NCBI RefSeq assembly: GCF_006345805.1
Contig: NC_043018.1
Coordinates: 16,616,001 to 16,680,000 of the forward strand
Origin: Octopus sinensis
Taxonomy: Eukaryota
Direction: 5' to 3'
DNA length: 64,000 bases
The notes under the pieces were generated by a model. It did not search any database. It was given only the letters and a program-made list of their open reading frames with translations, and had not been told where the DNA came from. The position numbers and the translations under genes are program-made. Shown here piece after piece: positions 32,575 through 33,223 of the stretch. Positions within the stretch are counted from its first letter, which is position 1; each line of letters starts with the position of its first letter.

Positions 32575-33223
32575 AGAGGGGAAGTTAAAAGGTATCTGCA
32601 CTTTCGCCATAACTTATCTTTATTACTGTGTCAGTACCTTCTGCACATGCGTGCTTATAGTTTGTACTGTTGCAGTCACGTGAACGAAGTTTCAACCTGA
32701 TTGCGCCATTTTTCTTTCTGGCTTTATAGTGGAAGCTCCACTAGCAAGGTGAACCAAAGAAGAACAAAGGGCAGTGATCTGATTTCTCTGCTCGAAAGCT
32801 GTGTCAGGTGCTGAAATTCACCGGGGGCTTTTAGCAGAATACGGGGACAGAGCACTACCCCGTAGAAGTGTGTATGGGTGGATCGAGAAGTTTGAAAGTG
32901 GCTGGACAAGCATGATGCACGAAGAGGGTGTCGGACACCCGTCAACCTCCATTACTGACGAAAATATTCAGTAAGCTAAAGAGATGGTCATGGTGAACTG
33001 GTTCACCATGACCATCTCTTGGATCATTCTTCTTTGGTGCACATTGCTTGTGGAGTGGCCATGCTTCCACTGTAAAGCCAGAAAGAAAAATGACGAATTC
33101 AGGCTGAAACTTCGATAGCGTGAGCACAATAGTACCAACTACAAGCACGCATGCGTTGAATGCAGTGTAACAGTAAAAAAATATGTTATGGCGAATGTGT
33201 AGATAATGTTTTACTTCCCCTCG
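32575..33223. mobile_element. Fold-back non-autonomous mariner derivative (5' end duplicated at both termini)
   Basis: TA-flanked ~40-bp TIRs extend to ~190-bp inverted arms (32575-32764, 33027-33223); the + strand carries the mariner N-terminus (TKEEQRAVI*FL...LPRRSVYGWIEKFESG...GHPSTSITDENI); perfect 20-bp-arm palindrome at 32979-33020. Confidence 0.92.

What the first reader, a model, noticed from the sequence alone, without database searches (positions are those of the whole stretch)
32575..33223. Fold-back mariner element with two 5' ends and a perfect central hairpin
Seen: both termini are the same mariner 5' end (TIR, leader, first codons), ~190-bp arms about 80% alike by eye. The transposase frame stops where a perfect 20-bp-arm, 2-nt-loop palindrome (32979-33020) begins. 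Inference: a template switch made a fully palindromic ~0.85-kb element, then ~190 bp of the right arm was deleted. The centre is mismatch-free while the outer arms have diverged, suggesting repeated intrastrand correction or selection on the hairpin. Established: coleoids have extensive ADAR editing and long inverted repeats are its substrates.
Basis: partly seen in the sequence, partly recalled or inferred. Interest (0 to 1): 0.72.

Follow-up and report, generated by a model that had tools for sequence, protein, structure and literature searches.

The report
Dead fold-back mariner transposon relic
This is a decayed, non-coding leftover of a mariner "jumping gene" whose right half was replaced by an upside-down copy of its own left end; it is a known by-product of sloppy DNA repair, and nothing here shows that it does anything.

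Summary
Window 32575-33223 is a 649-bp element flanked by TA on both sides. Both ends are the same mariner 5' end: a 28-nt terminal repeat, a ~150-nt leader and the first codons. The arms are 82% identical (155 of 189 aligned bases). A perfect 20+20-nt palindrome sits at 32979-33020. The left arm carries the Mos1-type HTH_48 N-terminus with two stop codons, and no catalytic domain is left.

The same 5'/5' fold-back layout recurs in relatives of this mariner lineage from other public assemblies, with at least six different junctions. One relative is a complete 776-bp near-symmetric palindrome with TA duplications. Another pair shows a 591-bp loss of the centre. Three diverged copies share one junction.

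Such mariner derivatives are already published, as is the template-switch gap-repair model for them.

The "mismatch-free centre" is weak evidence. The outer arms contain a perfect 20-nt run too, and P is about 0.02 at a pre-chosen spot. No correction or selection need be invoked. Copy number in the source genome, transcription and ADAR editing could not be tested, and the host could not be identified.

Verdict: an ordinary new member of a known kind. Low interest.

The parts
32573..32574 (.). TA, left target-site duplication
   Evidence: Read directly. Related copies L001, L008, L080 and L095 also have TA outside the same terminal repeat.
32575..32602 (+). Left terminal inverted repeat (28 nt), 5'-type
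   Evidence: AGAGGGGAAGTTAAAAGGTATCTGCACT aligns with CGAGGGTAAGTCAATAAGTATCCGCACA of L001. In L001 the 5' and 3' ends are alike for only 28 nt.
32603..32735 (+). 5' leader of the left arm. The start codon was lost by an 8-nt deletion at 32735/32736.
   Evidence: Arm-to-arm alignment. The leader is 75-79% identical to the leaders of L003 and L080.
32736..32998 (+). Remnant of the transposase N-terminus (HTH_48), with in-frame stops at 32780-82 and 32972-74. It ends at Asn of ..MVMVN|RR.
   Evidence: Pfam HTH_48, E 3.3e-7, 30.8 bits against a cut-off of 24.1. It is 61-65% identical to P0001-P0004, P0009 and P0010.
32979..32998 (+). Left arm of the perfect central palindrome (still transposase-sense sequence)
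32999..33000 (.). TG loop. It may be a decayed CpG of AAC-CG-GTT.
   Evidence: Most relatives carrying the GAGATGG...AAC motif read AAC CGG at this spot. This is inference.
33001..33020 (-). Right arm of the palindrome: an inverted copy of 32979-32998
   Evidence: 20/20 complementary.
33021..33026 (-). GGATCA. Its reverse complement TGATCC probably represents the V-I-R codons (left-arm 32775-32780) of the right arm. The ~198-nt gap in the right arm lies between this and the palindrome arm.
   Evidence: Alignments. Relatives read CAGTGATCCGATTTC here. A 6-mer only, so tentative.
33027..33223 (-). Right arm: the inverted 5' end. It comprises the terminal repeat 33196-33223, the leader, the ATG at 33062-33060 and about 12 codons (MATPQAMCTKEE).
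   Evidence: 82% identical to the left arm. It also matches the 5' leader of L003. Translation.
33224..33225 (.). TA, right target-site duplication
   Evidence: Read directly.

Best explanation
The feature is an inert, non-autonomous fold-back derivative of a mariner transposon.

Layout (shown): left arm = terminal repeat, leader and the first ~90 codons of the transposase. Next comes a 20-nt inverted copy of the last 20 nt of that arm. Then comes an inverted second copy of the same 5' end, reaching in only to about codon 20. The whole is flanked by TA.

Most likely origin (inferred): after a parent element was excised, the gap was refilled by copying. Mariner's two terminal repeats are interchangeable. 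The strand growing in from the right end could therefore switch, after the repeat, onto the 5' end of the template and copy the leader and first codons. Copying was then broken off and the two ends were joined.

Centre (inferred): the 20-nt palindrome is either the remains of a once symmetric centre, with about 198 nt later lost from the right arm, or a short snap-back patch laid down at the junction.

Since then the arms have decayed by about 0.2 substitutions per site. The element encodes nothing. If it ever moved, it needed a transposase supplied by another copy. The DNA or RNA hairpin is a by-product of this history.
For: - Anatomy and TA flanks.
- HTH_48 domain and homology running to the palindrome centre.
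- A canonical relative (L001) shares only 28 nt between its two ends, and its 3' end carries the C-terminal codons. The window's long arms are therefore not the family's normal ends.
- The same 5'/5' layout occurs in relatives with different junctions. These are L008 (arms 90-92% alike), L080 (94-95%), L003, L094, L095, and L004/L009/L011, which share one junction. Several more ORF fragments read from sense into antisense; the clearest are listed.
- L095 carries a 33-nt antisense patch at its junction, much like the window's 20-nt patch.
- L003 is an L080-like copy that has lost 591 bp across its centre.
- Both window arms share states absent from the other copies (GAGGGGAAG, TTACTGT, CTGGCTTTAYAGTGGAAGC), and each is the other's nearest relative (79% against 77% or less).
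- Published precedent: seven Drosophila mariner MITE lineages have the 3' part replaced by a 5' portion (PMC4161770). The template-switch gap-repair model was proposed for Goblin (PMC3814204).
Against: - No second copy with this junction was found: none in the window, none in 95 fetched loci, and none through a junction-spanning ORF search. Mobility of this particular form is therefore unshown.
- The mechanism is inferred from the end product only.
- If arms and centre are equally old, a perfect 20+20 nt has P of about 0.02. Arm identity also rises towards the centre: 78%, 78%, 90.5%. The trend has P 0.05 without the centre and 0.006 with it. This is a mild anomaly that a later local event or arm-to-arm conversion would explain better.
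- The inner end of the right arm falls within 0-2 nt of the junction of the shared-junction family.
Confidence: 0.8

Rival explanations
1. The copy belongs to the shared-junction fold-back family seen in L004, L009 and L011. In that family, sense sequence up to ..AYSLQI is joined to antisense sequence from ..AVIR. In this copy a later local template switch (quasi-palindrome correction or snap-back) would have replaced about 30-50 nt of sense sequence after GTGAACTGG with the inverted copy of the preceding 20 nt. The perfect hairpin would then be younger than the arms.
For: - The three family members are colinear through one junction.
- The window's right arm ends at GGATCA, within 0-2 nt of that junction.
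- Window TCTCTT|GGATCA equals family TCTCTT[CAGATTC]GGATCA.
- L009 aligns colinearly with window 32771-33153 at 71%. That is as close as the family members are to each other (67-71%).
- This reading explains a mismatch-free centre beside 18% diverged arms.
- The parental sequence at this spot is a weak quasi-palindrome in some relatives.
Against: - The window arms are closer to each other (79-82%) than the right arm is to the family's right arms (65-69%).
- Both window arms carry states that both arms of the family lack, and vice versa (TTTCARC against TTTGAGC; CTGGCTTTAYAGTGGAAGC against CTGCTGYTACAGTGYAAAC). This rival therefore needs arm-to-arm homogenisation.
- L004's arms are 65% alike, against 89% by my hand count from the alignment for the same stretch in the window.
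- The junction coincidences were found after the fact and rest on 6-mers.
Confidence: 0.25
2. The hairpin or the long inverted repeat is kept by selection or repeated intrastrand correction because it works as an RNA, for example as an ADAR substrate or a small-RNA precursor.
For: - If transcribed, the 649 nt fold into a long imperfect duplex (-322 kcal/mol, z -25.7).
- The 42-mer forms a stable hairpin.
- Arm identity rises towards the centre.
Against: - Strong folding follows automatically from the inverted duplication.
- A 20-nt perfect run is not unusual at 82% identity (P 0.5 anywhere; the outer arms have one too).
- No Rfam family matches anywhere in the window.
- No other copy of the centre was found.
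- The better-preserved relatives L008 and L080 show no centre-ward rise in arm identity.
- There are no expression data, and the host is unidentified.
Confidence: 0.05
3. Two separate mariner insertions of one subfamily landed tail to tail. A later deletion removed both 3' parts and the DNA between them.
For: TA would flank each end in any case. About 18% arm divergence is in the range seen between copies of the family.
Against: - It needs two nearby insertions plus a deletion that happens to leave a perfect 20-nt inverted copy exactly at the junction.
- The same layout recurs in relatives whose arms are 90-95% alike, including one complete symmetric element.
- The window arms are each other's nearest relatives.
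Confidence: 0.04
4. Assembly or sequencing artefact (a chimeric fold-back read).
For: Fold-back chimeras do occur in long-read and amplified libraries (my own knowledge).
Against: Artefactual fold-backs give identical arms. Here the arms differ at 34 positions plus indels and carry TA-flanked transposon ends. Only the central 42 nt are perfect.
Confidence: 0.01

Closest known systems
Drosophila mariner MITE sublineages in which the 3' part is replaced by a 5' portion (Wallau et al. 2014, PMC4161770, section 'MITEs')
   Same: Same superfamily and the same rearrangement: an internal deletion plus replacement of the 3' part by an inverted 5' portion, which greatly lengthens the inverted repeat. 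Low copy numbers.
   Different: Different mariner lineage and host. Those were shown to have transposed at least once, from their flanks. For the window copy only TA flanks are seen, and no second copy with the same junction.
Goblin MITE derived from the Tc1/mariner element Ozma in Aedes aegypti (Yang et al. 2013, PMC3814204)
   Same: Both subterminal regions derive from one end of the parent, in inverted orientation. The proposed origin is gap repair after excision, a template switch at the terminal repeat, and then end joining.
   Different: Goblin duplicates the 3' subterminal region and has 54-bp repeats. The window element duplicates about 200 nt of the 5' end and keeps about 260 nt of coding remnant. 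Goblin's junction shows 6-8-nt microhomology. Here it is at most 2 nt, plus a 20-nt inverted patch.
Fold-back Tc1/mariner-related elements of C. elegans: Tc7, PALTA and Cele families (listed in PMC3814204; Tc7 = Rezsohazy et al. 1997, cited; details from my own knowledge)
   Same: Non-autonomous elements with long inverted repeats whose tips are the terminal repeats of an autonomous Tc1/mariner element.
   Different: In those families only the tips resemble the parent. Here the whole arms are recognisably the parent's leader and first codons.
MADE1 / MiHsmar1, the palindromic human mariner MITE that gave rise to the mir-548 family (MiHsmar1 is mentioned in PMC4161770; the rest is my own knowledge)
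   Same: A mariner-derived palindromic element whose transcript folds into a hairpin.
   Different: MADE1 is 80 bp, consisting of two terminal repeats and a few bases, and is present in thousands of copies with known miRNA output. Here the element is 649 bp, apparently single, with no RNA evidence.
Quasi-palindrome templated mutation / short template-switch events (Ripley model; my own knowledge)
   Same: It would turn an imperfect inverted repeat into a perfect one in a single step, as the rival for the 42-nt centre requires.
   Different: It is a point-scale mutational process and not a transposon family. The parental quasi-palindrome is weak.

Membership tests
mariner (Tc1/mariner superfamily) | TA target-site duplication | tested here: met
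   TA at 32573-74 and 33224-25. The same holds in relatives.
mariner (Tc1/mariner superfamily) | Short (~28-30 nt) terminal inverted repeats | tested here: met
   The outer 28 nt match the 28-nt repeat of the related 5'/3' copy L001.
mariner (Tc1/mariner superfamily) | Mos1-type paired HTH N-terminal DNA-binding domain | tested here: met
   Pfam HTH_48, E 3.3e-7, above the gathering score. 303 relatives at E<=1e-3.
mariner (Tc1/mariner superfamily) | DD34D catalytic domain | tested here: not met
   Absent from this copy. The coding remnant stops at about codon 90. More distant relatives carry it: P0012 has Transposase_1 at E 9e-28, and P0011 has a weak DDE_3 match. The element is therefore a derivative and not an autonomous member.
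Mobile fold-back MITE family (amplified non-autonomous element) | Several copies at different sites sharing the same internal junction | tested here: inconclusive
   No second copy of this junction in the window, in 95 fetched loci or through ORF search. The source genome could not be searched. A sister form (L004/L009/L011) does share one junction across three diverged copies.
Mobile fold-back MITE family (amplified non-autonomous element) | Two usable terminal repeats in inverted orientation with a target duplication | tested here: met
   The left repeat begins AG instead of CG.
ADAR-edited long dsRNA | Long intramolecular duplex in a transcript | tested here: inconclusive
   The predicted fold is very stable. 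Nothing shows that the locus is transcribed.
ADAR-edited long dsRNA | A-to-G mismatch clusters in RNA reads; the host is a coleoid | not testable with these tools
   No RNA data are available. The host was not identified: the one window ORF tried is not on record, and the nearest DNA relatives come from metagenome and run assemblies of unnamed origin.
Known structured RNA / miRNA families (Rfam) | A match at the family's gathering score | tested here: not met
   No Rfam match in the whole window.

The most novel reading that the evidence does not exclude
This mariner lineage may be unusually prone to making and spreading 5'/5' fold-back derivatives in distant hosts.

Its breakpoints seem to cluster in the loop of a weak natural quasi-palindrome in the gene, at codons ..E-M-V-x-x-N|R-R-V-A-I... 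The cases are the window, L094, L095, the L001 deletion and the L004 deletion.

On this reading the window's perfect hairpin would be that quasi-palindrome made perfect by a template switch. It would be a recurrent, sequence-programmed route from an autonomous transposon to hairpin-forming elements that could feed editing or small-RNA pathways.
Probability: 0.1. Interest if true: 0.45.

Novelty: new member of a known kind. Interest (0 to 1): 0.2.

Why it matters
It matters little for this locus. The element is a dead transposon relic with no sign of function.

The modest value is comparative. One mariner lineage has produced the same 5'/5' fold-back layout repeatedly. The forms found here run from a complete symmetric palindrome, through copies that lost their centre, to a shared-junction form found in three diverged copies. 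That series fits the published template-switch model, and it shows that long transposon palindromes lose their centres.

If the source genome holds many such copies inside transcribed regions, they would be a natural pool of long double-stranded RNA. That remains untested.

Tried and rejected
- Other copies in the window: none.
- Protein search with the 82-aa remnant: only two distant hits.
- Protein search with the junction-spanning ORF: nothing.
- Exhaustive representative search with the 63-aa remnant and profile search: best identity to the window remnant 65-71%.
- Looking up a window ORF to learn the source: not on record.
- Literature search for the run accessions of the related contigs: nothing.
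- Metagenome scan: 80 loci, of which only one (L080) is a clear fold-back. Many contigs are too short to judge.
- Rfam on the whole window: no match.
- Central 16-mer pattern in all fetched loci: no match.
- Long terminal repeats as the family's normal state: rejected, because the canonical copy L001 shares only 28 nt between its ends.
- The mismatch-free centre as evidence of correction: rejected as not significant.
- A strong parental hairpin as the cause of the breakpoint cluster: only weak support, with z -2.2, -1.9 and -0.75 in three relatives and no hairpin in three others.

Full report
**What is in the sequence.**
Window 32575-33223 (649 bp) is bounded by TA on each side, at 32573-74 and 33224-25. 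Repeat finding and a self-BLAST show that 32564-32764 and 33027-33234 are inverted copies of each other: 78.5% identity over 209 columns, E 1.4e-45. They also show that 32979-32998 and 33001-33020 are a perfect 20-nt inverted pair around a 2-nt loop. The 20-mer occurs nowhere else in the window, even with three mismatches allowed, and in none of 100 shuffles. A global alignment of the arms, trimmed to the element, gives:
- 155 matches, 34 mismatches (13 transitions, 21 transversions) and 9 gap columns;
- identity 82%, or 78% counting gaps;
- Kimura distance 0.21.

**The left arm is the 5' end of a mariner.**
The frame starting at 32702 reads TKEEQRAVI*FLCSKAVSGAEIHRGLLAEYGDRALPRRSVYGWIEKFESGWTSMMHEEGVGHPSTSITDENIQ*AKEMVMVN. 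It matches Pfam HTH_48, the Mos1 transposase HTH domain, at E 3.3e-7 and above the gathering score. Homologues are 61-65% identical. They include proteins of the termite Cryptotermes secundus and ORFs from metagenome contigs. These homologues read ..IQQAREMVLANRRV.. at the place where the window reads ..IQ*AKEMVMVN. Transposase homology therefore continues through the left palindrome arm and ends at its centre. The TAA at 32972-74 is one of two stops; the other is 32780-82, a CGA-to-TGA change. The right arm, read on the minus strand, is the same terminal repeat and leader. It keeps the start codon (33062-33060) and reads MATPQAMCTKEE. The left arm lost the ATG through an 8-nt deletion.

**These long arms are not the family's normal ends.**
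A related internally deleted copy (L001) has TA, then CGAGGGTAAGTCAATAAGTATCCGCACA at both ends. Its two ends are alike for only 28 nt, and its 3' end carries the transposase C-terminus. The window's right arm also matches the 5' leader of relative L003. Both termini really are 5' ends.

**The right arm in detail.**
Reading inward from the end, the right arm follows the left arm through the KEE codons. It then lacks 10 nt and reads TGATCC, which is the ancestral CAGTGATCCGA of relatives, left-arm 32775-80. It then jumps about 198 nt to the 20-nt palindrome arm. The TGATCC assignment rests on a 6-mer and is tentative.

**The same layout is found elsewhere.**
An exhaustive search with the 63-aa remnant found 303 relatives. 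Several of them are ORFs that read from sense N-terminus into the antisense strand of the same 5' end, in both that set and the later profile-search set. The DNA of these shows fold-backs with different junctions:
- L008, from a marine metagenome, is a complete 776-bp near-symmetric palindrome. It is flanked by TA, its arms are 90-92% alike, and it has a 19-nt perfect centre around a 9-nt loop.
- L080 has arms of at least 553 nt, 94-95% alike, with a longer left arm.
- L003 is 97.9% identical to L080, including 528 nt of flank. It lacks 591 bp spanning the centre. This is a direct case of centre loss.
- L094 ends its sense arm at exactly the same Asn codon as the window.
- L095 is a complete ~505-bp element with a 33-nt antisense patch at its junction.
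- L004-L007, L009-L010 and L011-L013 are three copies, 67-71% alike, that share one junction. Sense sequence up to ..AYSLQI is joined to antisense sequence from ..AVIR, colinear and without gaps.

The window element is 68-79% identical in DNA to these copies, and closest to L080 and L003. None of the 95 loci carries the window's central junction. A protein search with the junction-spanning ORF found nothing.

**Is the perfect centre special?**
At 82% identity a perfect run of 20 nt is expected somewhere in about half of such alignments. The outer arms contain one themselves. For a pre-chosen block of 20 columns the chance of no difference is 0.016-0.024, and this block was chosen after looking. 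Arm identity does rise inward: 78%, 78% and 90.5% by thirds. The trend has P 0.05 without the centre and 0.006 with it. L008 and L080 show no such rise. I read this as a mild, unproven hint that the centre, or the inner arm, is younger or was homogenised. It is not evidence of selection. Most relatives that carry the GAGATGG...AAC motif read AAC CGG at the centre. The present AAC-TG-GTT could be a spacer-less AACC|GGTT whose CpG decayed. This is inference.

**How it most likely arose.**
- Shown: the layout, the TA flanks, the recurrence of the layout in relatives, and a centre deletion in a relative.
- Inferred: gap repair after excision, with a switch of the growing strand at the interchangeable terminal repeat. 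Both ends would then copy the 5' end, and end joining would follow.

This is the model proposed for the Goblin MITE (PMC3814204). Mariner MITEs in which the 3' part is replaced by a 5' portion are already reported for seven Drosophila lineages (PMC4161770).

**Three variants remain open.**
2. A one-step asymmetric product with a 20-nt snap-back patch, as in L095.
3. Descent from the shared-junction family, with a later local template switch making the perfect hairpin.

For variant 3: the window's right arm ends within 0-2 nt of that family's junction, and TCTCTT|GGATCA equals the family's TCTCTT[CAGATTC]GGATCA. Against variant 3: the window arms are each other's nearest relatives, and they share states that both arms of that family lack. 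I put variant 3 at about 0.25.

**What could not be done.**
The source genome could not be searched, so the copy number of this junction is unknown. No tool identified the host. The one window ORF I looked up is not on record. The run accessions of the related contigs are not in the paper library. The 'coleoid' premise and everything about ADAR editing are therefore untested. The predicted RNA duplex is very stable, but that follows from the inverted duplication. Rfam finds nothing in the window.

**Verdict.**
The feature is an ordinary, dead fold-back mariner derivative, a new member of a known kind. Interest is low. The one loose thread is a possible clustering of breakpoints around the ..N|RR.. 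codons, at a weak natural quasi-palindrome. It may be a detection bias of the ORF-based search.

Noticed in passing
window 19039-19720, 44465-44862, 52559-52956: A dispersed repeat of about 400 bp is present three times, partly in tandem at 19039-19720. The copies are 74-87% alike. It is possibly a SINE-like element and was not identified.
   Followed up: partly
window 56386-56670 (+): An ORF reads like the N-terminus of a different mariner lineage. The HTH_48 match is weak (E 5e-4, below the cut-off). It has no DNA similarity to the fold-back element.
   Followed up: partly
window 63464-63760 (-): An ORF reads ..FQQDGAPPQYH..PPRSPDLTPLDF.., which by eye resembles a mariner transposase C-terminus. 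It has no Pfam hit.
   Followed up: partly
window 32325-32372 and 32463-32542: Two (ATT)n runs lie just upstream of the element, with about 90 bp of unique sequence between them. That unit is not repeated elsewhere in the window.
   Followed up: yes
window 7173-8154 and 37923-39417: There are very long low-complexity or microsatellite tracts, which read as poly-S/F/L and poly-H/T/P/S ORFs. The window as a whole is 36% G+C and rich in simple repeats.
   Followed up: no
L003 2313-3423 versus L080 1-1707: Two contigs from different collections carry the same insertion, 97.9% identical including 528 nt of flank. L003 lacks 591 bp across the fold-back centre, with about 5 nt of overlap at the junction.
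   Followed up: yes
window 32998/33001; L094 ~520; L095 ~735; L001 ~965; L004 ~870: Breakpoints of separately rearranged copies fall within about 18 nt around the ..V-N|R-R-V.. codons. The parental sequence there (GATGGTACTGGCAA-ACCGGCGAG-TTGCCATC) is a weak quasi-palindrome, with DNA fold z -2.2 in L080 and -1.9 in L009 and none in L011 or L002. It could be a hot spot or a bias of ORF-based discovery.
   Followed up: partly
L014-L093 (metagenome scan): This mariner lineage is abundant in one group of JGI metagenome contigs: 331 confirmed stretches. Named relatives occur in a termite, a frog and a pseudoscorpion. The nearest DNA relatives of the window copy (78-79%) come from such contigs, so the lineage is spread across distant hosts.
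   Followed up: partly
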